A stretch of DNA of 63,486 nucleotides, counting the filler, from Platydemus manokwari (lineage: Eukaryota), in assembly GCA_037951405.1 (NCBI GenBank). It is 6 parts of 6 records of this genome, joined end to end, with 100 filler letters (N's around TTAATTAATTAA, not from the genome) between each part and the next. Parts side by side here need not be neighbours in the genome. Positions count along the whole stretch, not along the records: positions 40,757 to 54,417 come from JBBMOY011653624.1; 5 more parts are not named here. One strand, given 5' to 3'. How positions within the stretch are numbered: the first letter of the stretch is position 1; every line of letters begins with the position of its first letter. Below, in pieces: positions 3,001-51,479 of the stretch. The translations under genes were made by a program, and so were the position numbers. The notes beneath the pieces were generated by a model, which saw nothing but the letters and a program-made list of their open reading frames with translations, was not told the origin of the DNA and did no database searches.

Positions 3001-4235
3001 CTTGCAGGATCCAGCGTTTATTATATACTAAGACCATGGATCTAAGTAAGCGTTCCTCACATTTAAATAACCAAAAACTGTATTCGGTTGTTATATTTCT
3101 TATTTATCTAGCAGACCCTCACTATCTTAAATTTGATGGATTTGAAGTATATTTTAAAAATAAGATAAATAATCAAAATTATAAAAATTTGAGTTAGAAG
3201 ATATTTTTAAAAAATTACATTGAAAACAAATATGCCCCATTAATATTTATAAAATAATCTTGCTTAAAAAATTATTGTTAACTGCTTAATTTTAAAAAAT
3301 TATTAAAATTAGTTAAATTACTAAAAGTAATTTTAAATAAAAAATAAATATGTGAGCATTTTCATCTAATTTAAAAAAGAAGAAAAATCAGATGGAAATA
3401 AATTTTAAATATTTTGAAATTTGTATAAAAATGGATGTATTGAAAATATATTATTTTGTTCTGGAGAAAACATGACTTTCGATTTAACACCATTGTTCTC
3501 TTATAAAATAAAGCCACTCAAACAATTTCGTCAATATCGGCTCACCTGCTTTTTGGTACTAGAATCGTTGTTGTCAATGCTAATCGCATTGTCTTCATAC
3601 AAGAGCGAGATCATTTTAAGTGAAAATAAATTGGTAAATATAAGGTCTAATAATACCTTGGGCTTTGAGACTTACAAGATTGATTTAAACGCTCACCAGA
3701 GTAAAGTTATTGAATAATAACAGATATAAAAGGACTAAAAATATAAAAACAACATCGAAACAACGTTCTATTTAGTATTTTATAATCTATGAATTTTGAT
3801 TTTTAGTGTTTTAGGATCTTTGGAAAAGATAATTATTACTTATAAAGGCACTTTAATTATAAGTAATAGTTTATTGTTATAAATAGCTTTTGTCGAGCCA
3901 TGCACTCTTAAGTCAAATATAAGTAATATTTACTTCTTCGCCTTGATTTATTGCTTCCAATATTCGACACGTGGATATTTTGTAGCTATCTAGTTATTCA
4001 GGGAGTCTAATAATTTACTAAATCATTCCATTGCTTTTTAGCTTGGTAAATATTCCAACTCTTATATAATATTATGCTTAAAATTAATTTACTTATTCAT
4101 GAATATAACTACAATTACAACAACTTTCCACCACTAAAACTTTATCATCAATATGAATTTGCTGTAGTGGAACAAATATTCCTTCTGGCCAAAACCTCTT
4201 CAAATAATTAAAACATTAAGATTGCCTTAATTAAT

Positions 4236-40756: not shown

Positions 40757-41291
40757 TCAAGCATAACAAAAGTTAATTAAAAACCTTTTAATATTATCCA
40801 AATTGTTAGAATCAATATGATTATCATTATTATTAAGCTTGATAAAAAGGTTTAGTAAGTTAATTATAAAATATTTAAATTTATTAACCAAAGCTAAATT
40901 TAAATTATCAACAATCAAATATTTATCAAAATTTATAAAATTTATTAAAAAACATTTAATAAAATTCATAAAATTAATAACGAAATTTTAAAAAAGTGAA
41001 AAAAAAACTAACGTTAATCTCACTAAATTTCAAATTCCAATCTTGACTGTTCTTGGTGTCTCCGTTGATTGGTTGGCCAATCACCTGCAGTCAATGCATG
41101 CACAGCGTGTTTATACATGAGCAGTCAGACATTCGCGGCACAATATTTGCCTCAAATTCAATAAAATCATCAAATATCCAAATCCCAATCATTTTCAAAA
41201 CATCATTTCACAATCATTTCACATGTTGTTCGTTTCTTAATAACAAAACAACGTTTTTCATTCAACCCCACCCATAAAAACATAAATACTA

Positions 41292-41500
41292 CAACACATT
41301 GACGGACGCACTCCAATATACGAAAATTTCTTTTTCTCACTACTCTTTTTAGCTTTTTTCTTTACAATTTATATTAATGTTGCAATTTTTCAATGCATTG
41401 ATTTTCATATATATATATAATAATACTACTTTCCATTCATCATTAATCATTTTTAATCGAACCAGTGACCTTTAGATCTTCAGTCTAACGCTCTCCCAAT
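41292..41500 (-). repeat. tRNA-Phe-headed repeat, copy 1
   Basis: Colinear with 44938-45193. Shared blocks include CGAAAATTTCTTTTTCTCA, CTTTACAATTTATATTAATGTT, TTCAATGCATTGATTTT, (AT)n, AATAATACTACTTTCCATTCATCATTAAT and ACCAGTGACCTTTAGATCTTCA. Confidence 0.9.
41456..41499 (-). pseudogene. tRNA-Phe(GAA) fragment (D-loop to T-loop; both acceptor-stem strands missing)
   Basis: Reverse complement TTGGGAGAGCGTTAGACTGAAGATCTAAAGGTCACTGGTTCGAT is the conserved animal tRNA-Phe core, with anticodon arm TTAGA-CTGAAGA-TCTAA and T-loop GTTCGA. Confidence 0.9.
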
Positions 41501-44500
41501 TAAAATATTTATCTTTCATTTTTTCCTCGAATCATTGTCTCCTTCTCCTCTTTTAGTTCTATGATGAATCCGCTTTGGTGATGATGCCAAATTCTTGCTG
41601 AGTGCCTGATGTTTGAAATGGACAGCTCCTTTGTTATGTACATCATGTTCTGTAACTTAGATTTTCAGTAGTGTCAATATTGTGCTTTGCGGAACAGGAT
41701 CCAAGTGATCCAATTATAATTGTCTGGATACTGACTGTGTAACCAGGCTTGTGTTCGTATATTCGATTTCGCAGTGGGATATAATATTCAAAATTCCTAC
41801 TGTGTGCATTGTTAAAGAGATCCTCCTTGTTAAGCTGGCACTTTACATCAGCGCGATAGATGGTTTTTTTGACTGGACTCTATATGCACAAGTCAATTCT
41901 TAAGTTTGAAACCTCATCATTATTGAGTAGATAAGGAATTGTCTCATTGATTAAGTGTGAAGATTTAATTTCCTCGTAGACCATTCGTAGGCATTCGTCA
42001 TGTCTTTACACTATTAGGGTCAGGCAATGGATACAAGTTTGTAGAACATGCATCAATATTTCCTCAGGTGCAATGCACCTTATGCACTTCCTCTTGTCTG
42101 GGTCTCTTTCGAAAATCCGCCCGTTTACTAGCAGCACGTTTAACCTGGCTCGATGAATAAATTGCCATGCATGACTTCCAATGAGTCCGTTGTAGATTAC
42201 TGAGTTAAATCTTGTATTTGTTGTAATGATTTTGGCCAGATAATTTGATGCTTTTCCTTGAAGCCATTTTTGAAGGTAGGATTCTCGGATTGATTTGTGA
42301 ATTATTTGAGTAACTTTATTCTTGTCCTTGTTGCCTATTACCGCTGTTTTTCCTGAGGAGTTGTTTAGTCTGATGTTTACATCATATCCTATGCTTTCGA
42401 ATTCGATTGAGATAAGGTGTTGTTTTTTGAAATGATTGATTGCTAAGATTAAAGGCAGCCACCAGCATTTCTTGGCATTTAAATTTTTTGATTTGACTGC
42501 TACTCCTGTAAGCCATTTCAAGGATTGCTCAAATGAAGTCGGTGTGTTGGTTAGTCTTGATAATGATACTTGGTATAGTGTTTCTTGAATAATTGTTTTC
42601 AGATCACTGTCCAGTGAATTTAGTAGTTTGTAAGCTTGAATAATCTGCTATAAATGATGTTCGTCAAGTCCCACAATCCTGCTCCGCAATTTTTTGTTTC
42701 TATGTAGATATAGCAGGATTCACCCTGATGTGGCAATGATAATTTCTGAAGCATTTTCTAACTTCTGTGCAGCGATTTTCTACAATTCTAGATGTTTTTC
42801 GATCTTTCTTCGCTTTAAAGGCGCTGATTTTCATTTCTCTAGTTCAGAAGGCAGATGTCAGTGTTAGAAATAGGATGGTTCTGATTGCATTGATCTTTTG
42901 AAAACTCATGATTTGTAGATCTTTTGGACTATTTACGATGATTGCAATGTCGTCAACATATGCGAGAACTCTGATTTAGTTGTTGAATATTTGATAATGT
43001 GGGACGTCGACGGTTTTCATTGCAGCAAGAACCAGGTTAATAACCATAGAGAACAGGAGCATTGACAGTGGGCGTCATTGTTTTACTCCAATATTTAGTG
43101 GCAATTCATTTATTATTATTATCTTTAATGATTTTCTGAAAGCCACTACTAATTCCATGTTTTTTCAGAATTTAAAGCATGCGATAAAATTGGGAAAGCA
43201 TTTTTTATATCAAGCCATGCTACAGATGTCGGCTTTTTAGTTCTCTTATGCTCTTCGAAGAAGGGCATTGTGCTCGATGCACCCCTCGAATTCCATTCCA
43301 ACGTTCGGACCAGGACTGAGGATTTTGTTATGAGAGATCCACTGTAATATACGGTCCGCAAGTATTTCTGTAATTAGTTTGTAGCTCGAGTTGCATAGAG
43401 CGATTGGTCCCCAGTTTTATGTGTTAGAATAGTTATCTCGAACTGGTTTGGGGAGGAGAGATGTTCTTAATTGTTTCCATCCTGATGTGCATCGTTTACT
43501 AGAAATAATTTATTTGAATAATGATTCCAGAAGGGTCAAGTGTCTTGAGGTGAGAGTAATTAACATTATCCGGTCCAGGAGTGCAGTTGTCGAGTGATTT
43601 GTGCTTCCGAATTATTTGATCTGAGGTGGTTGGTTCCAAATCCAGTATGAACTCACTTGGAGTATAAAAATTGATAATGTCTGCAGAAATGTGGTTGAAT
43701 GTGTCGAATGAAAACGCTTCGGTAAAGTCGGATGCAGAGAATCTTCTTTTCATTGAGAATTATCTTTTCGATTGTAACTTTGGGGTTGATTTTGTACATG
43801 GCTCTGAGTTTTGTAGCATCCAGAAGTTTGAATGATTATTTAGAGCCAAGATATGGTCGAGGATGGCAACTGAGTTTGGATTCTTTGGCTGGCATTTTTG
43901 ATATGATGAGCTGGTTGATTTGATTAATGTCAAGGTCAGTAAATGATTTGAGAATTTCATGTAATCTTTCCATTTGTTCCGATATTGTCAGAGTCCGTGT
44001 TGGTTTTTCCGCTATTAGAATAGGATTGTTGTTGATTTGTTTTCATGTTGTTATTAATGATTGAAACTCTTGAACTGAGTGTGTTTGCCATTTTCTAAAC
44101 CTTGATATCAGTGAGAGAAAGATCTCTGCTAAAATGATAGATGTAGGAGCATATGAGGACATTGCTAAATAGTCCAGATCCTTTTGAGAGATATTGACAG
44201 CTTCAAAAAGCCTTATTTTCTATTTTGATGAAAAGAATGTTGACAACTTTTTGAAGAACATCTTTGACTAGAATGGATAGGTCCTCGTTTGGAAAGTTTG
44301 TTGATGGGCCAAAGAAATAGAATTCTCAATTTTCAATATCGATTACTATGAGTCATAAATGATAGTTTGGTGGATGTATCAAGCAGTAAATAGTGTCCGC
44401 GTTTTTTACTTTGTCTTTTTCGAGGTAAGAAATAAGGTAGCTGTGATTTTTGTCGATTAGAGCGATGATTGTGATTAGATCGTGTTCAGAATTAATCTCG

Positions 44501-44935
44501 GGTTCAGAATTTCCGTTGCAAAGATGGTGTGCTAGTTTTCTAATGTTGAGTACTGGAAATCAATCTTTTGAGATGCTTCGTCCTTTTGATATTTGGAGAG
44601 CATAGTAGCAGATCATTAGACCACAATCAACGTCATTGATTTGATTGCTTATATTTGTTGCTTGTTCATGAATCAAGATATGATTAGTGCCAAACGAGTT
44701 GTTTAGATAGTGGTGTATTTTCTCAGATCTTTCAATAGATTTTTCCAGTCTAAAGACAATGATCCAGTGGCAATGAGAGATGTTGATTGATGCAAATAAT
44801 ATATTTGTTAGCTGATGATGAGATTTGACATTAAATGTCGTAGTTTCACCGTTTCATATTTGTAAAGCCAGCTGCGGATGAATAAAGTCTGATGATGGAG
44901 GTTTCTAATATTTTGCCGTCTTTTAAATTACTCTA
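41501..44935 (-). mobile_element. Degenerate NeSL-clade-like RLE non-LTR retrotransposon with Ulp1/C48 protease remnant (element 1), probably 5'-truncated
   Basis: Protease motifs INISHCHWIIVF..QINDVDCGLMICYYA (~44600-44800). RT motifs TPGPDNVNY, VAWLDIKNAF, GVKQ..PLSMLLF, VLAYVDDIAII. C-terminal WQFIHRARLN..CIRC..EILMHVLQTC, RHD and IIIGSLGSVP. Many stops and frameshifts. Confidence 0.9.
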
Positions 44936-44937
44936 TC

Positions 44938-45073
44938 GAACACACTGCGAAGATGCATCCAATACACGGTGATGATGACCCTGTTATTAGACGAAAATTT
45001 CTTTTTCTCAGTACTTTTTTCTGCTTTTTTTCTTTACAATTTATATTAATGTTACAACTTTTCAATGCATTGA

Positions 45074-45104
<31 letters not shown>

Positions 45105-45193
45105 TTAATAATACTACTTTCCATTCATCATTAATGATTTTATCAATGGAGAACACCAGTGACCTTTAGATCTTCAATCTAACGCTCTCCTAA
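44938..45193 (-). repeat. tRNA-Phe-headed repeat, copy 2 (tRNA part 45155-45193)
   Basis: Reverse complement TTAGGAGAGCGTTAGATTGAAGATCTAAAGGTCACTGGT differs from copy 1 by two transitions. It is followed by the same AT-rich body with a longer (AT)n. Confidence 0.9.
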
Positions 45194-48100
45194 TAAAACA
45201 TATTTTACAGAGTTTTTATATACAATCAATAAGGTATATGCCAGCAAGTCAAACCAAACAAAAACAGAGTTGGCAGCTGAGTTGGGAGGACTTTAAATTG
45301 TGTGATTCTTCTTTATCCTTTTCGACACTGATTATGTTTTTTTCATTGATCATTTATGGCCGGTCCAGTGTCTCTGCAAAGGTCGATGTAATTGATTGGA
45401 ACATCGGATTCGTGAAGATGCCATATTCTTGTACTGAATCTTATTGCATAGATGCTTTATCTCGTTTTTAGAAATTCCAATACGTTTGAGGATTTCGATC
45501 GTTGAATCTGGAATACTTCCAAGAGATCCGATCACAATCGTCAGAAGCTGAACCTGATATCTTGGTTTTTGTTCACAGATTTCCTGTTTCAGTCTCTGAT
45601 AATGCTCAATATTTTTTGCTATGCAGTTTCCAATTGTTTGAGACATATCGATTTGACATTTAACATCAACGAGATAGATTTTATGAGATTGTGCATTTTC
45701 AAGATAGATATCTATGCTTTTTCTCGAAGTGATGTCCGGTTCAGTAAGATATTGGACAGTGTCTTTGATATTGACATTCCATCCGGGTTTGCGAAGTTGT
45801 TAATAGATGAGATTTGTGAGTCATGTCTTTGAGTTATGAGACTTTTGTTACATCGGCAAGTTTGTAAAATGTCTCATTTGACAATGTCTCAGTATGACAA
45901 CGCCGACAGAGTCTTGCATATGGACATGCAATGATCGGCAACCAGTTGTGTCGAGCTCAATGTACAAATTTCCAAGAAAAGTGCCAATTTCTCCTCTATA
46001 AACAATTTTGTTTAACTTATCGTTGTGATTGACACATTGGCAAAGAAGATTAGAGCGTTGACTGCTGGCCCATTTGATTCGATATGTCAGGTGAACATTG
46101 GCATGGAGAATTCTTGTTATCTTTATGCTGTCTGTTGGTTGGATGACTTCAGTTCTATTTGAGCCATCAGTGAGTCTTAGGTTGAAATTTAGATTGTCTA
46201 ATTCAAAGCTGATGTAGATTTTTAGGTGATTCCTGAAGTAGTCGATGGCTTTTCTGATTCGTGCTCCAATATTTCGACCATTTAAACGATTGTCGTTCAG
46301 CCATTCAAGTGATTGCGATTGAGATAGATTATTGTCTCCACTTGATCTGCATGTAGCAGCAAACATTAGAGATTCTCTCGTTACTTGACAAACACTCGGT
46401 TCTTGTGAATTGAGCAATTTGAAAGGTTGGACTAGTTGTTGTAAGCTGTTGTAGTTCACGAAACAATTGACAGAGTTTTGTATTTGGATTGCCATTCAAG
46501 ATGTTTCTTTTTGACTTCTCTGGTTCTGAAAGCGAATGTCAAACGTGAAAAACCAAAGGTTTGTGTCTTGAAGAAATGGATAAGGTGTTTGGTCAACATT
46601 ATATCCACTGCAACACCTAGATAATCTTAGAATTCTTCAGGTTTCAGATGATCATTGATGATAATGTTGAAATCGTTGGGTGATTCGTGAGGAATTTCTA
46701 GGAAGGCACACTTGTTTGGTTGATAGTGAAGATTGCATAGTGATTCTGTTGATGATGCAATATCAATAAAGTATTGTAGATCTTTGCACGAGTTGGCAAT
46801 TATTACAACGTCATCAACGTAAGCTAGAACTCGAAACTCTTTGCCAAACATTTTGAATTTATTGCAACCTGCATTTTCGATAGCGTTGAGAACTGGATTA
46901 ATGGCAAGAACAAACAAGATCATTGATAATGGACACCCTTGCTTGACACCAACATTTATTGGCAATTGTGGAGTGTTGATTTGTCCACATTTCTAGTACG
47001 TTGAAGTGTTTTCATATAATTCCCGAATGATATCAATGAAATTCTTGTCAACTCCAATTGATTTGAGATTTTGTCACATGGATTGATGTGGAACACAGGG
47101 AAAAGCACTCATTATATCTAGAAATGCAGTTGCCGTTGCTCTCGGTAATCCAATTTTATTCTTGACGAACTCAAAAGTTGCTGAAAGGATAGCATTGTTT
47201 TCGATGCCTCTCTTGATTATGATCCACCTTTTTGTCCCGGGTGCAAGATATTATTTGCTTTCAACAACGATATCAAGCGATCGGTTAGGATTGAGGTGAA
47301 TATTTTGTAGGTTGAGTTGGTCAGAACAATAGCTCGCCAGTTCTAGACATCTTTGTAATTAGATTTGTTTGGTTTCGGTAATAATGTTGTTTAGAATGTT
47401 TTCCATTTCGTTGGTGAAACTCCGCTTTGGATGATTTTGTTGAAGAAGAGCCACAGAAATTTACCTTGTGGATCCAAATGGATAAAATGGGTATAATTTA
47501 CTCTATAAGGACCCAGGGCACAATTTTTTAGTTTTTCAAATTTGGCCACAATTTCTTCACAAATGAAATCTTTGATCTTCAGCTTTTCAGTCACCGGAGT
47601 AATTGATTAAAATAGTCGATAATCAGAGTCGATAATTGGTTTTGAATGTTTGGCAAATATTCTCAAATGACGGAATTTCTAAATCGGTGTCAGATGAATG
47701 AAGGATTTTATTAATAGTCATCTTTATTTTTGTTCGAAATAGCAGACGAAGTTTCGATTTTTTTGATACAAGTCTTAGTGCGGTTGTTGACCAATTTCAG
47801 TGTTGAGTTTATTCTACTTGCCAATGAATCCAAGTCGATATTTTCAAGAGATTGATCGAGAACAAAGTGCTCAATATATCTACAGATCAGCAACTGACTG
47901 AAAAGACAGGATCACTTCACTTGATACAGACATTTATTTTCTTTAATTTCGACTGTTTTTTCCAAGAGAAAATAGGAAAAGTGCTCCACGATAGTCGATG
48001 CATACAGTGTCAAGTCCGGATTAACGTTAAGCGATGTTGGATTGAAGATATAATATTCTCACGTTTCAATGTCCACAATAATCAGGCATAGATGGAAACC

Positions 48101-48860
48101 TGGTGGGAATATTAGACAAAATATGATCCGTGTTTTTTTCAGAGTTGGTATATTATGGTAATTGATAAGGTATTACCAATTACCTTCAAATAGTGACATA
48201 CAACTTGTTGGGTTCAATATCGAGAATGTCATATTCCAATTCAATGATTCCATAAATTTCATGATGAAATCACAATTCATTTTGCTATTCACCACTCGAG
48301 TATTCTCTTTGGCGTTGAATTCTTGTTCACTTGAAAATTCCAGCATAAAATCCTTAAAGAATGGTACAATTTTCTTTATATTTTCAGATATGATTCCAAC
48401 AACGGCCTGTAAGATTCTGGTGAAATTCATAACGGTTGATGGCGTTATAAATGCCTTGGATTCTGGTGTTAATGCAGCTGATCCATTAACAAAGAAAGAT
48501 TTCAATAGCTTAACAAGAACCTTTTCATCATTGAGACCATCAATAGTGATTGATTTTCCAAGCAAGTTATACATCAACCCTCACTTCTCTTTGTAATTGT
48601 ATATAGTAAGGTATAGAAAAACGAACGTTATCGAGTATGTAGTCTCGGTTGCCATTTATCATACTGATAATCAGTTCATAGTCCAGAACAAATATGTTTT
48701 GGAAGTTTTGGAATAAATATTTGACTGAATTAATAAGATTGATTTTGTAATAGTAGTTGTAGACAATGGACCTTCAATGATTAAACCAAATAAATTGAAG
48801 AGACGGAGAAATAATGGTTATGGTAGTAGTGGTGCGAATATTGATGATAATGAGGGTATT
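45194..48860 (-). mobile_element. Degenerate NeSL-like RLE non-LTR retrotransposon (element 2), related to but diverged from element 1
   Basis: RT motifs CALGPYRVNY, AFLDIMSAFPCVPH, NVGVKQGCPLSMILFVLAINPVL, VLAYVDDVVII and YLGV. C-terminal YRARHN..CRRC, RHD and LLTIVIGSLGSIP. Upstream IIFCLIFPPGFHLCLIIVD may be a diverged protease segment. Confidence 0.88.
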
Positions 48861-48869
48861 AAAAAAATT

Positions 48870-50900
48870 GGGACGTTGGAAAATAAAATTGAAGACTTGT
48901 GTAAAGAAATTTCGAAAATAGTTTGGAATACGTTGGCATACAACTGTAAACTTTTAGTATTTATGAAAGTAATGACGGAAATATTACTTATAAATGAAAA
49001 TATTTCGATATCTCTATTGAAAATAGGATAAGAAATTTAATTAAAATAAAGCTAAATTATTTTTTAACGAATTCGACATATTAGAAGCCAGATTGTAAGA
49101 GAAGAGTCTACGGACACGTTTTTGAATCAAATTTTACTTTATTATGATTACGTGATGAATTATGGCATTGTGCCAAAAATGATGTTGTTGTGAAAATAAA
49201 AAAAACCTGTGTATAGAAGAATAGAGGAACCATGCAAAAATGTCAAAGAAGGGCAGTACACTTTTAATTGAATTGAATTTTAGTGAAAAAGATAAAATTT
49301 TGGAACTGATCAACAAAAATATATCAATATCAGAAGAAGGATTTCAGAAAAGTTGAGAAATGAAGTTGCTATTATTTTATATTAAATGAAAACAAAAAAT
49401 AAAAAAAATAAAATATTAAGAAATGGAATTTTCTGCTTTTGTTTCTAAAACTCTGAGAGAAAATTTAAACTGTAAGAGGTTGAGTTCGACGTTTGGCATT
49501 CGAGGGAAGTAGAAGCGGAGATTCAGAATAATAAACGAGTAATATTAGCGAATGATATGGTACTAGGAAATGTTGATTGCTTTGTAAAAGCTTTGGTTGT
49601 TGACGGAAATAGCGGAAAAGTGGATAGTTTCTTTGAGTTTGTGTTTGGAGCCGATAAGAGAAACAGTGAAGAAAGAGGGATTTGATAATATGCGATTCGT
49701 TGCTTAAAGCTAATAACGGATATGTCTCGGAAAGGTTAAAGAATGAATTTAGATTGCGTAGAAGAAATAAATAAAATCAACGAGGACAGCACTTGGAATT
49801 CAGTTGGGTTGTATAATTTTTGTTCCAAAAATCGAGAAATGAAATTTTAAAAAACATCAAACAGAACTGAAATGATAAACTGAATTCTGAGGATAATAAT
49901 AATCTAATGAGGGTTCTAGCCAAATACAGAAATAGTTTTAGTTTTGGGTTAAAAGGAGATGCTAAACATATAGTAGATAGAATGTTTGAATTGAACGTCA
50001 TTATTCCAAGTAATTCAGTGTCGAATTTCCCAATAATGCTAGTCAAGGAAAAAAATGGAACGAATAAAATGCGCATAGATTATAGGAAACTAAATGCTGC
50101 TACGTTCAGATCAATTTTTCCATTCACAAATTCCGAAGAAATATTCGATGCTGTACTTTTCAAAAATGGATTTGGCGACCGGATATCATGAATTTGAATT
50201 GAAGGAAGAAACGAAAGAGAAAACACTATTCAGCACTAGATACAGACAGTTTCAGTTTAATCGAATGCCTTTGGGATTATGTTCAGCACCTGCTACTTTT
50301 CATAAACTTATGAATGAGGCTGTGAAGACTGAAAATTGGACAAACTGTTTAATCTATCTAGATGATATTCTGATATTTGGAAAAACAGTCAAAGAACACA
50401 ATGAAAGGTTGGAAGGAATTTTTAATCGAATAGATGAGGCTGGGTTGAAAAGGGTTCCAAAGAAATTTTTTTTCCTAGGAAAAGAAATTAAGTATTTAGG
50501 ACATGTGATTGACGTAAACGGCATACGAACAGATGAAGACAAACTTGGGGTAATAGAAAATTGTCAAAACATCAATGTGTCAAGGAAAAACAGGAATTTA
50601 TGAGATTATGTGGTTATTACTGGCGGTGTATAAAGGATTTTCCTGGTGTTACCTAACCGCTATACCAATTAGTGAAGAAAGAAAGTAAATTTGAGTGAAA
50701 CAATTAAGCAACTGTATCTTTTCACAAATTGAAAACATCATTACTGTCACCACCAGTTCTAATTTCCCATGCAAAGAAGGGAAATGTTTTGGTACTGACA
50801 TATCTTTCGGTGCTATAGGAGCCGTGCTTCCTCAAACACAAAACGTTGAAAAACGAGTGATAGCGTATGCATAAACAATATTGACAAAAGCTAATACAAC
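48870..50900 (+). mobile_element. Degenerate Ty3/Gypsy retrotransposon (RT/RNase H remnant)
   Basis: FPIMLVKEKNGTNKMRIDYRKLN, FSKMDLATGYH, QFNRMPLGLCSAPATF, LIYLDDILIFG, IKYLGHVI and TDISFGAIGAVL. Confidence 0.92.
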
Positions 50901-51479
50901 CATAAGTATAAGAATTATTAATTTTTTCGGTTAATGGTGAAATTTTTATTTCTCTATCTTCACCTACTTTTTAGTTAATTCTTTTATTATGAAATGAAAA
51001 TCATATTTTGATCCATTATAAAAATAAAGTGAGAAATCTTTTGGTTTCCTAGCTAATACAATCTTAACATGGAGCTCCTCAACAATTGTTTTCTTTTAAA
51101 TAATGATTATGATCTCTAAATTTAATTATTGGTTCTATTGTTAGTCCCAGATTATGTAATTATTTTCTTATAAATAATTATTGTTGTTAATCACGGGATA
51201 TGTAATATCGACGAAGTTGGATCACAAATAATTATTTCTTTGAATTTCTTTTTACAAGAAACACAGTTAGATGAATCTCAGATTTATTTAGATTTTCAGG
51301 AAAACGCAATAAATTTTAAAGCAATAAATTTTGATGGAAACCAACAATGTTTTTACTAGTGACCAAACCAAAATAAATGCTCCTACTAAAACCAAACGAT
51401 TCTTTCATTTATCAATCCAAGATGCTGATAAATGATTTCAGACAACTAAAGATTTCACCCCATTTAATCAAATTATATA

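What the first reader, a model, noticed from the sequence alone, without database searches (positions are those of the whole stretch)
41292..48860. Two divergent NeSL-like retroelements inserted at the same site of a tRNA-Phe-derived repeat: candidate tRNA-Phe-targeting site-specific retrotransposon system
Seen in sequence: on the minus strand the order is element 2 > tRNA-Phe repeat > element 1 > tRNA-Phe repeat. Both elements' 3' ends meet the repeat at essentially the same point, just before TT(G/A)GGAGAGCG in the tRNA-Phe D-loop (41499 and 45193). The elements align only at protein-motif level and their 3' UTRs do not visibly match, whereas the downstream ~210-255 bp align easily as DNA. 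This argues that the repeat is the target rather than part of either element. Established: RLE-encoding non-LTR elements (R2, R4, NeSL, Utopia) are often sequence-specific for multicopy RNA genes. From memory, some planarian families target tRNA genes of other isotypes; this needs verifying. Inference: this is a lineage specific for tRNA-Phe or a tRNA-Phe-derived SINE/satellite. I do not know of one having been described.
Basis: partly seen in the sequence, partly recalled or inferred. Interest (0 to 1): 0.82.

Follow-up and report, generated by a model that had tools for sequence, protein, structure and literature searches.

The report
Two dead retrotransposons in one tRNA-Phe-like site
Two long-dead jumping genes of the R2/NeSL type sit one behind the other, each joined at the same nucleotide to a fragment that looks like phenylalanine tRNA. 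This fits a known habit of this element group (inserting into tRNA genes) with a tRNA type not yet reported, but genome-wide specificity could not be tested.

Summary
On the minus strand the order is E2 (45194 to about 48743-48860), repeat 2 (44924-45193), E1 (41500-44923), repeat 1 (41283-41499).

- **The elements.** Both are decayed non-LTR retrotransposons (at least 12-18 in-frame stops and 3-6 frameshifts each). They carry a reverse transcriptase, a CCHC knuckle and a restriction-like endonuclease. E1 also keeps an Ulp1/C48-like region. They share only 31-47% protein identity and their 3' UTRs do not align.
- **The repeats.** They are 93-94% identical. Each begins at the same nucleotide of a tRNA-Phe-like fragment (D-loop, about nt 15/16, anticodon GAA). 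No intact tRNA is present.
- **Relatives.** Only 14 distant relatives turned up in 1.8 billion proteins. Five of their contigs end in the same A/T-rich terminus, joined to other tRNA-like fragments (Leu-, Gln- and Gly-like).
- **Literature.** Kojima & Jurka 2015 already describe NeSL-related families specific for tRNA-Arg, tRNA-Glu and tRNA-Pro.

The repeat is therefore most likely target DNA: either a roughly 220-245 bp target-site duplication or two neighbouring copies of a tRNA-Phe-derived repeat. I rate it a new member of a known kind, of modest interest.

The parts
41283..41499 (-). Repeat copy 1 (target DNA downstream of E1). A tRNA-Phe-like internal fragment at about 41456-41499 is followed by about 170 bp of A/T-rich non-tRNA sequence with a short (TA)n.
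   Evidence: Rfam tRNA model 18.8 bits at 41450-41505 on the minus strand. ARAGORN finds no tRNA.
41500..44923 (-). Element 1 (E1): a decayed RLE-type non-LTR retrotransposon. It covers almost a whole ORF2 equivalent (P0003 aa 51-1503) and has no ORF1. At least 17-18 in-frame stops and at least 6 frameshifts.
   Evidence: tblastn. The 5' limit comes from the end of repeat homology.
44503..44898 (-). E1 region homologous to the Ulp1/C48 protease domain of the relatives.
   Evidence: tblastn P0003 aa 51-201, 34% identity, E 1e-19. Pfam places Peptidase_C48 at P0003 aa 80-184. Pfam does not hit the E1 pieces directly.
42880..43760 (-). E1 reverse-transcriptase region (broken).
   Evidence: tblastn to the RT regions of P0003, P0007, P0008 and P0012.
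41646..42647 (-). E1 thumb/linker, CCHC zinc knuckle (C..C...H....C) and the restriction-like endonuclease core (..ADVKC..).
   Evidence: Alignment A2. Comparisons.
44924..45193 (-). Repeat copy 2 (target DNA between E2 and E1). Its tRNA-Phe-like fragment lies at about 45150-45193. It has a longer (TA)n and an extra 25-nt block near its far end.
45194..48743 (-). Element 2 (E2): a decayed, 5'-truncated RLE-type non-LTR retrotransposon (P0003 aa about 256/280-1491) without a C48 region. At least 12-14 in-frame stops and at least 3-4 frameshifts. The true 5' end lies somewhere in 48743-48860 and is undetermined.
   Evidence: Pfam RVT_1 at 46630-46992. tblastn.
45353..45799 (-). E2 C-terminal piece holding the endonuclease core (..IDIYL.. 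and ..LVDVKC..).
   Evidence: Alignment A2. Comparison.

Best explanation
E1 and E2 are dead copies of two divergent families of R2-group, NeSL/LIN-like non-LTR retrotransposons.

**Proposed mechanism.**
- Their protein, while active, nicked one DNA strand inside a tRNA-Phe-like sequence, in the D-loop between about nt 15 and 16. This is inferred from the junctions.
- The freed 3'-OH primed reverse transcription of the element RNA from its A/T-rich 3' end (...TTTTA/AA). This target-primed reverse transcription is established for R2 and inferred here.
- Second-strand cleavage downstream then completed the insertion (inferred).

**What the repeat is.** The 217-270 bp direct repeat behind each element is target DNA and not part of either element. 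I cannot separate two sub-variants and give them roughly even odds.
- (a) One site was hit twice. E1's second-strand cut lay about 220-245 bp downstream and produced a very long target-site duplication. Either E1 re-used the half-site left next to E2, or E2 later hit the complete site that the duplication regenerated.
- (b) Two neighbouring or nested copies of a tRNA-Phe-derived SINE-like repeat were each hit, and E1's insertion lost the 15-nt 5' part.

Either way the lineage aims at tRNA or tRNA-derived DNA. That habit is already documented for its relatives with other isotypes.
For: - **Same junction twice.** Two elements with only 31-47% protein identity and unalignable 3' UTRs join the repeat at the same nucleotide.
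- **Domain build.** RT in E2. CCHC plus the RLE motifs R(I/V)D and (L)VD(I/V)KC aligned with relatives. C48 plus RVT_1 in full-length relatives and a homologous C48 region in E1. The nearest solved structures are R2 proteins (E 1.4e-54).
- **Relatives' 3' ends.** They carry a similar terminus (AAATAAATTTAG, AAATAAATATTTAA, AATAAATTTTTAG, TATAAATATAAAG, ATAAATTTTTA) followed directly by tRNA-like fragments.
  - L001: Leu-like D-loop at the same structural position.
  - L007: Gln-like 3' end plus a T run.
  - L015: Gly-TCC-like anticodon arm.
  - L003 and L016: a shared B-box-like sequence.
- **Published cases.** LIN15_SM, LIN25_SM and NeSL-1_TV are tRNA-specific, and LIN15_SM ends ...atatttttaa| next to tRNA-Arg. 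Its 5' and 3' junctions in S6 Fig appear to overlap by about 40 nt of tRNA, which would be a duplication of the polarity needed for variant (a).
- **Local structure.** The far end of repeat 2 coincides with E1's 5' end. There is no third repeat copy and no tRNA 5' half. This is what a duplication flanking E1 predicts.
Against: - There are only two junctions, both in one locus. Under variant (a) they are not fully independent.
- A 220-245 bp duplication would exceed anything I know for non-LTR elements.
- The repeats differ by only about 6%, yet E1 carries at least 18 stops and 6 frameshifts. That is more than I would roughly expect for so little divergence, unless E1 arrived already damaged or the repeats were homogenised by gene conversion.
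- No duplication or target remnant is visible upstream of E2.
- The tRNA identities of the fragments (Phe, Leu, Gln, Gly) rest on my memory of canonical sequences. Rfam gives nothing significant for such short pieces.
Confidence: 0.68

Rival explanations
1. The repeat is a shared 3' module of both elements: a captured tRNA-derived tail or a transduced flank that travels with them. The real 3' end of each transposition unit would then be the far end of the repeat (...GTA(A)TTTA), and the elements would not be aimed at tRNA-Phe.
For: - The far end of the repeat (GTATTTA / GTAATTTA) loosely resembles the clade's A/T-rich terminus.
- The repeat never appears without an element in this piece.
- No tRNA 5' half is present.
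Against: - It needs a 93-94% identical module on elements that share 31-47% protein identity and have unalignable UTRs in between.
- The element-to-tRNA junction follows the clade-typical terminus seen in relatives and in LIN15_SM, where what follows is a genuine tRNA.
- It leaves the head-to-tail adjacency of two related elements unexplained.
Confidence: 0.12
2. The elements aim at tRNAs but not at one isotype. They recognise the conserved D-loop/A-box region of many tRNA genes and tRNA-derived repeats, and both copies carry a Phe-like fragment only because one locus was hit twice.
For: - L001's element groups with E2 and sits at the same structural position of a Leu-like D-loop (the tree gives 92/96 support for the group holding E2 and P0003).
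- LIN15_SM hits three different tRNA-Arg isoacceptors.
Against: - Published relatives are isotype-restricted.
- There is one junction per relative, so no relative shows two isotypes.
- E1 and E2 may or may not be sisters (AU test p 0.27).
Confidence: 0.12
3. There is no targeting at all. The structure would be an assembly artefact, or a local duplication plus chance nesting in a transposon-rich region.
For: - The neighbourhood is full of decayed transposons, including Ty3/Gypsy-like pol remnants at 49.9-53.5 kb.
- Only one public run holds a third of the sampled words of the stretch.
Against: - The two elements are different sequences, so a simple duplication or collapse cannot make the pattern.
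- Identical junction nucleotides, the clade-typical termini and the tRNA-flanked relatives are not expected by chance.
Confidence: 0.05

Closest known systems
LIN15_SM (tRNA-Arg) and LIN25_SM (tRNA-Glu) of the planarian Schmidtea mediterranea, and NeSL-1_TV (tRNA-Pro); Kojima & Jurka 2015, PMC4640811
   Same: - RLE-type NeSL-related non-LTR elements whose A/T-rich 3' end (...atatttttaa) abuts an internal position of a tRNA.
- The termini of E1 and E2 (...AAATATTTTAA, ...AATATGTTTTA) and of the relatives L003 and L007 look alike.
- LIN15_SM appears to leave about a 40-nt duplication of tRNA sequence.
   Different: - The isotype here is Phe-like and the position is the D-loop at nt 15/16. LIN15_SM inserts near nt 25 and LIN25_SM near nt 4.
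- The target here is not an intact tRNA gene.
- Membership by RT phylogeny could not be tested because no Repbase sequences were on hand.
- The host organism is unknown.
NeSL-1 of Caenorhabditis elegans and Utopia-1_TSP (NeSL clade; Malik & Eickbush 2000 as cited in PMC4640811)
   Same: [quoted passage not shown] Both insert into multicopy small-RNA genes.
   Different: - Their targets are spliced-leader or U2 snRNA genes, not tRNA.
- The relatives found here appear to have a further upstream ORF of 350-800 aa. It is absent from E1 and E2.
R2 and R9 (R2 clade, rDNA-specific)
   Same: - The nearest solved structures to the relatives are R2 proteins.
- The same target-primed reverse-transcription logic applies.
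[quoted passage not shown]
   Different: - R2 and R9 insert in 28S rDNA, have N-terminal zinc-finger/Myb domains and carry no C48 protease.
- The duplication proposed here would be about twice as long as R9's.

Membership tests
RLE-type (R2-group) non-LTR retrotransposon | Reverse transcriptase domain of the non-LTR type | tested here: met
   Pfam RVT_1, 4.2e-12, on E2 46630-46992. Both elements align to the RT of P0003, P0007, P0008 and P0012. The nearest solved structures to P0003 are R2 proteins, E 1.4e-54.
RLE-type (R2-group) non-LTR retrotransposon | C-terminal CCHC zinc knuckle followed by a PD-(D/E)XK restriction-like endonuclease, and no AP endonuclease | tested here: met
   Alignment A2 shows CxxC...H....C, then R(I/V)D and (L)VD(I/V)KC, in the relatives and in the E1 and E2 pieces. 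Pfam finds no Exo_endo_phos domain in the full-length relatives. Catalytic activity was not tested.
NeSL clade (NeSL-1 / Utopia / R5 / LIN) | N-terminal Ulp1-like C48 cysteine protease (present in NeSL-1 and Utopia-1_TSP) | tested here: met
   Peptidase_C48 passes the Pfam cut-off in P0003, P0007, P0008 and P0012. E1 44503-44898 is homologous to that region. Pfam does not hit the decayed E1 pieces directly. E2 lacks the region because it is 5'-truncated.
NeSL clade (NeSL-1 / Utopia / R5 / LIN) | RT phylogeny places the element with the reference NeSL, R5, LIN and Utopia sequences | not testable with these tools
   No Repbase reference sequences were available. The tree of the sequences on hand only shows a well-supported clade (100/99) of E1, E2 and 12 unnamed relatives, apart from the Xenia and Homalodisca proteins.
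tRNA-gene-specific NeSL/LIN families (LIN15_SM type) | Many independent copies joined to the same nucleotide of one tRNA isotype | tested here: inconclusive
   Two junctions at the same nucleotide, but both in one locus.
tRNA-gene-specific NeSL/LIN families (LIN15_SM type) | A/T-rich 3' terminus directly abutting an internal tRNA position, with no poly(A) | tested here: met
   E1 ends ...AAATATTTTAA and E2 ends ...AATATGTTTTA, each directly before the tRNA-like fragment. The relatives L001, L003, L007, L015 and L016 show the same pattern, as does LIN15_SM in S6 Fig.
Functional tRNA-Phe gene (as the target) | Complete cloverleaf with acceptor stem and T arm | tested here: not met
   ARAGORN finds no tRNA in the piece. 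The Rfam tRNA model scores 18.8 bits against a gathering score of 29. tRNA likeness stops at the T stem or loop in both copies, and the 5' 15 nt are absent from the piece.
tRNA-derived SINE (as the target) | Dispersed multicopy family with a tRNA-related head (A and B boxes), an unrelated body, and a tail shared with a partner LINE | tested here: inconclusive
   The build (tRNA-like head, unrelated body, total about 230-285 bp) fits. However, the A box is missing, the B box is intact only in copy 1, tail resemblance is loose, and copy number could not be measured.

The most novel reading that the evidence does not exclude
The E1 family makes a target-site duplication of about 220-245 bp. That would be the longest known for a non-LTR retrotransposon. 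It would rebuild a complete tRNA-like target beside each insertion, so one site can be hit serially by different families. The nick position (D-loop nt 15/16) would be shared across isotypes: Phe here, Leu-like in the relative L001.
Probability: 0.25. Interest if true: 0.55.

Novelty: new member of a known kind. Interest (0 to 1): 0.35.

Why it matters
Site-specific RLE retrotransposons are now being developed as tools for safe-harbour gene insertion (R2 in rDNA; see PMC13580325). A clade that aims at defined nucleotides of different tRNAs would widen the set of natural targeting modules. It offers a series in which target choice changed among close relatives. A double-occupied site with a possible duplication of more than 200 bp also bears on how far apart the two strand cuts can lie. 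For this genome alone the finding is ordinary transposon annotation: two dead copies.

Tried and rejected
- **Alternative genetic code.** Rejected. TAA, TGA and TAG all occur (16, 15 and 5 times) opposite varied residues of the relatives.
- **Third repeat copy or further tandem units.** None in the piece.
- **tRNA 5' half (..TAGCTCAG).** None anywhere in the piece.
- **E2 plus its repeat nested inside E1.** No ORF1-like or N-terminal homology lies upstream of E2. Power is low because the ORF1s are poorly conserved.
- **Rfam on the short flanks of the relatives.** No significant tRNA or hammerhead hit.
- **Terminal duplication in L003.** None seen.
- **Other copies in public collections.** Nothing useful.
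  - The protein word search with the E2 endonuclease piece found nothing.
  - The metagenome scan returned 4 partial loci, none reaching a 3' end.
  - The viral scans found nothing.
  - The prokaryote genome scan found nothing.
- **Reads.** Later work used the sequence beside them and local scripts.
- **Host organism.** Not identified. The run and organism are coded, the atlas gave no useful taxa, and the Gypsy-like ORF gave only unnamed hits.
- **Are E1 and E2 sisters?** Undecided. They are not joined in the free tree, but the AU test gives p 0.27.
Full report
**Scope.** Only places 40757-54417 of the window are genome, and all work was confined to them. The piece is A/T-rich (33% G+C).

Reading the sequence, aligning the two regions and the repeat finder confirm the layout on the minus strand: E2, repeat 2, E1, repeat 1, flank.

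- E1's last base is 41500 and the repeat starts at 41499.
- E2's last base is 45194 and the repeat starts at 45193.
- Both repeats start with TT(G/A)GGAGAGCG. They continue through a 5-bp stem around a 7-nt loop that holds GAA at the anticodon position.
- From memory this matches eukaryotic tRNA-Phe from about nt 16 to the T stem with one or two mismatches.
- ARAGORN calls no tRNA. The Rfam tRNA model reaches only 18.8 bits. This is a fragment, not a gene.
- tRNA likeness ends at the T loop in both copies and unrelated A/T-rich sequence follows.

The tRNA-like part is 93% identical between the copies. The rest is 94% identical over aligned columns, with a (TA)n expansion, a 12-nt indel and a 25-nt extra block in copy 2. 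Beyond that block the homology resumes for about 45 nt (1 of 2000 shuffles as good). The repeats therefore span about 41283-41499 and about 44924-45193, and E1 starts near 44923. There is no third copy and no tRNA 5' half anywhere in the piece.

**2. What are the elements?**

- Stop-free pieces were searched separately. E2 46630-46992 hits Pfam RVT_1 (4e-12).
- An exhaustive profile-free search of 1.84 billion representative proteins with the 215-aa thumb piece of E2 found only 14 relatives, the best at 38-40% identity.
- Four of them are 1344-1540 aa proteins with Peptidase_C48 and RVT_1.
- The C-terminal alignment shows a CCHC knuckle and the endonuclease motifs R(I/V)D and (L)VD(I/V)KC. Both are also present in the E1 and E2 pieces.
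- The nearest solved structures to P0003 are R2 retrotransposon proteins (E 1.4e-54).
- By tblastn, E1 covers P0003 aa 51-1503, including the C48 region. E2 covers aa about 256-1491 and so is 5'-truncated.
- Neither element has the upstream ORF that the relatives carry.
- Both are dead. E1 has at least 17-18 in-frame stops and 6 frame changes. E2 has at least 12-14 stops and 3-4 frame changes. The stops are of all three kinds and lie opposite varied residues, so no unusual genetic code is involved.
- E1 and E2 share 31% identity in the thumb and 47% in the endonuclease core. Their 3' UTRs do not align.
- In a tree they fall within one well-supported clade with the unnamed relatives (100/99). 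E2 groups with P0003, P0001 and P0004 (92/96) and E1 is unresolved. Sisterhood of E1 and E2 is not rejected (AU p 0.27).

**3. Target or tail?**

The piece alone cannot decide, so I looked at the 3' ends of the relatives' contigs. Where the contig reaches far enough, the element ends in an A/T-rich terminus much like those of E1 and E2. A tRNA-like fragment follows immediately.

| Locus | Element terminus | What follows |
|---|---|---|
| L001 | ...AAATAAATTTAG | TGGTCTAAGGCGCC, a Leu-like D-loop at the same structural position as here |
| L007 | ...AATAAATTTTTAG | 22 nt that I recall as the exact 3' end of tRNA-Gln, then a T run |
| L015 | ...TATAAATATAAAG | a Gly-TCC-like anticodon arm |
| L003, L016 | ...AAATAAATATTTAA / ...ATAAATTTTTA | a shared B-box-like sequence |

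- Several other contigs stop at or just before the terminus. That is what assemblers do at multicopy targets.
- The isotype calls rest on memory, because Rfam cannot score such short pieces.
- Kojima & Jurka 2015 state that LIN15_SM is tRNA-Arg-specific, LIN25_SM is tRNA-Glu-specific and NeSL-1_TV is tRNA-Pro-specific.
- Their S6 Fig shows LIN15_SM ending ...ataatatttttaa directly at an internal tRNA-Arg position in three isoacceptors.
- These parallels make the element-to-tRNA boundary a true insertion junction and the repeat target DNA.
- A shared 3' module would need a 93-94% identical tail on elements that are otherwise 31-47% identical in protein. It would also leave their head-to-tail adjacency unexplained.

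**4. Why a direct repeat?** Two readings fit.

- **(a) Target-site duplication.**
  - In target-primed reverse transcription, a second-strand cut downstream of the first nick duplicates the interval.
  - The new element is then flanked by x..y on both sides, with x at its 3' junction and y at its 5' junction. This is exactly the layout rep2-E1-rep1.
  - E2 would then sit at the same nick position x. It arrived either earlier, with E1 re-using the half-site, or later, hitting the complete site rebuilt by the duplication.
  - In S6 Fig the 5' junction listed for tRNA-Arg-TCG runs to about nt 66 while the 3' junctions start near nt 25. That suggests about a 40-nt duplication of the same polarity in LIN15_SM. 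The text is machine-read and the family assignment of that 5' junction is not explicit.
  - R9 is published as making an exceptionally long duplication (title seen; 126 bp is from memory).
- **(b) Two copies of a SINE-like repeat.**
  - The repeat would be a tRNA-Phe-derived SINE-like family of about 230-285 bp in total, with a head, an unrelated body and a loosely LINE-like end.
  - Two neighbouring or nested copies were each hit.
  - The 15-nt 5' part at E1's 5' junction was lost.
- **Against (a).**
  - The length is unprecedented.
  - No duplication is seen at E2.
  - E1 seems more decayed than about 6% repeat divergence would predict. Mutation bias, gene conversion or a copy that was dead on arrival could explain that.
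- **Against (b).** It requires exact adjacency plus a deletion.
- I give the two roughly equal odds.

**5. What could not be done.**

- The decisive test is tabulating other copies in the same genome.
I worked beside them.
- Only one public run holds part of the stretch, and it is coded.
- Scans of the metagenome, viral and prokaryote collections gave nothing useful.
- The host organism stays unknown.

**6. Verdict.**

The elements are NeSL/LIN-like RLE retrotransposons, and the repeat is most likely their target.
- tRNA-Phe specificity rests on one locus. tRNA targeting in this clade is already published for Arg, Glu and Pro.
- This is a new member of a known kind.
- The more interesting open point is a possible very long duplication with serial re-use of one site.

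Noticed in passing
window 49900-53500 (+): Decayed Ty3/Gypsy-like LTR-retrotransposon pol remnants, on the strand opposite to E1 and E2. The 169-aa ORF at 50094-50603 is 50% identical to an unnamed protein with RVT_1, RT_RNaseH_2 and RT_RNaseH domains.
   Followed up: partly
L003 7459-7502 (+); L002 about 3485-3525 (-): A hammerhead-like core (CTGATGA...GAAAC) lies about 85 nt downstream of the tRNA-like flank of the closest relative. Rfam Hammerhead_3 gives only 12.7 bits, E 6.5, which is not significant. A similar motif occurs in reverse in L002. It recalls the tRNA-derived hammerhead SINEs of flatworms (from memory).
   Followed up: partly
L003 7374-7430 and L016 2114-2141: Two relatives from different samples are flanked by a similar non-canonical tRNA-like sequence (GGTAATG..TGAG..GGGTT..AAT). 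This suggests that some members of the clade target a conserved tRNA-derived repeat and not a true tRNA gene.
   Followed up: no
window 48061 and 44328 (-): E2 and E1 each have a TGA at the same aligned codon, where P0003 has Trp. This is probably parallel TGG-to-TGA decay, because the other stops show no pattern.
   Followed up: yes
window 45078-45105: The (TA)n microsatellite inside the repeat is 16 nt longer in copy 2 than in copy 1.
   Followed up: no
L003 142-7142; L005, L006: Full-length relatives carry a further upstream ORF of at least 350-800 aa with no Pfam hit, directly in front of the C48-RT-RLE ORF. Its function is unknown and it is absent from E1 and E2.
   Followed up: partly
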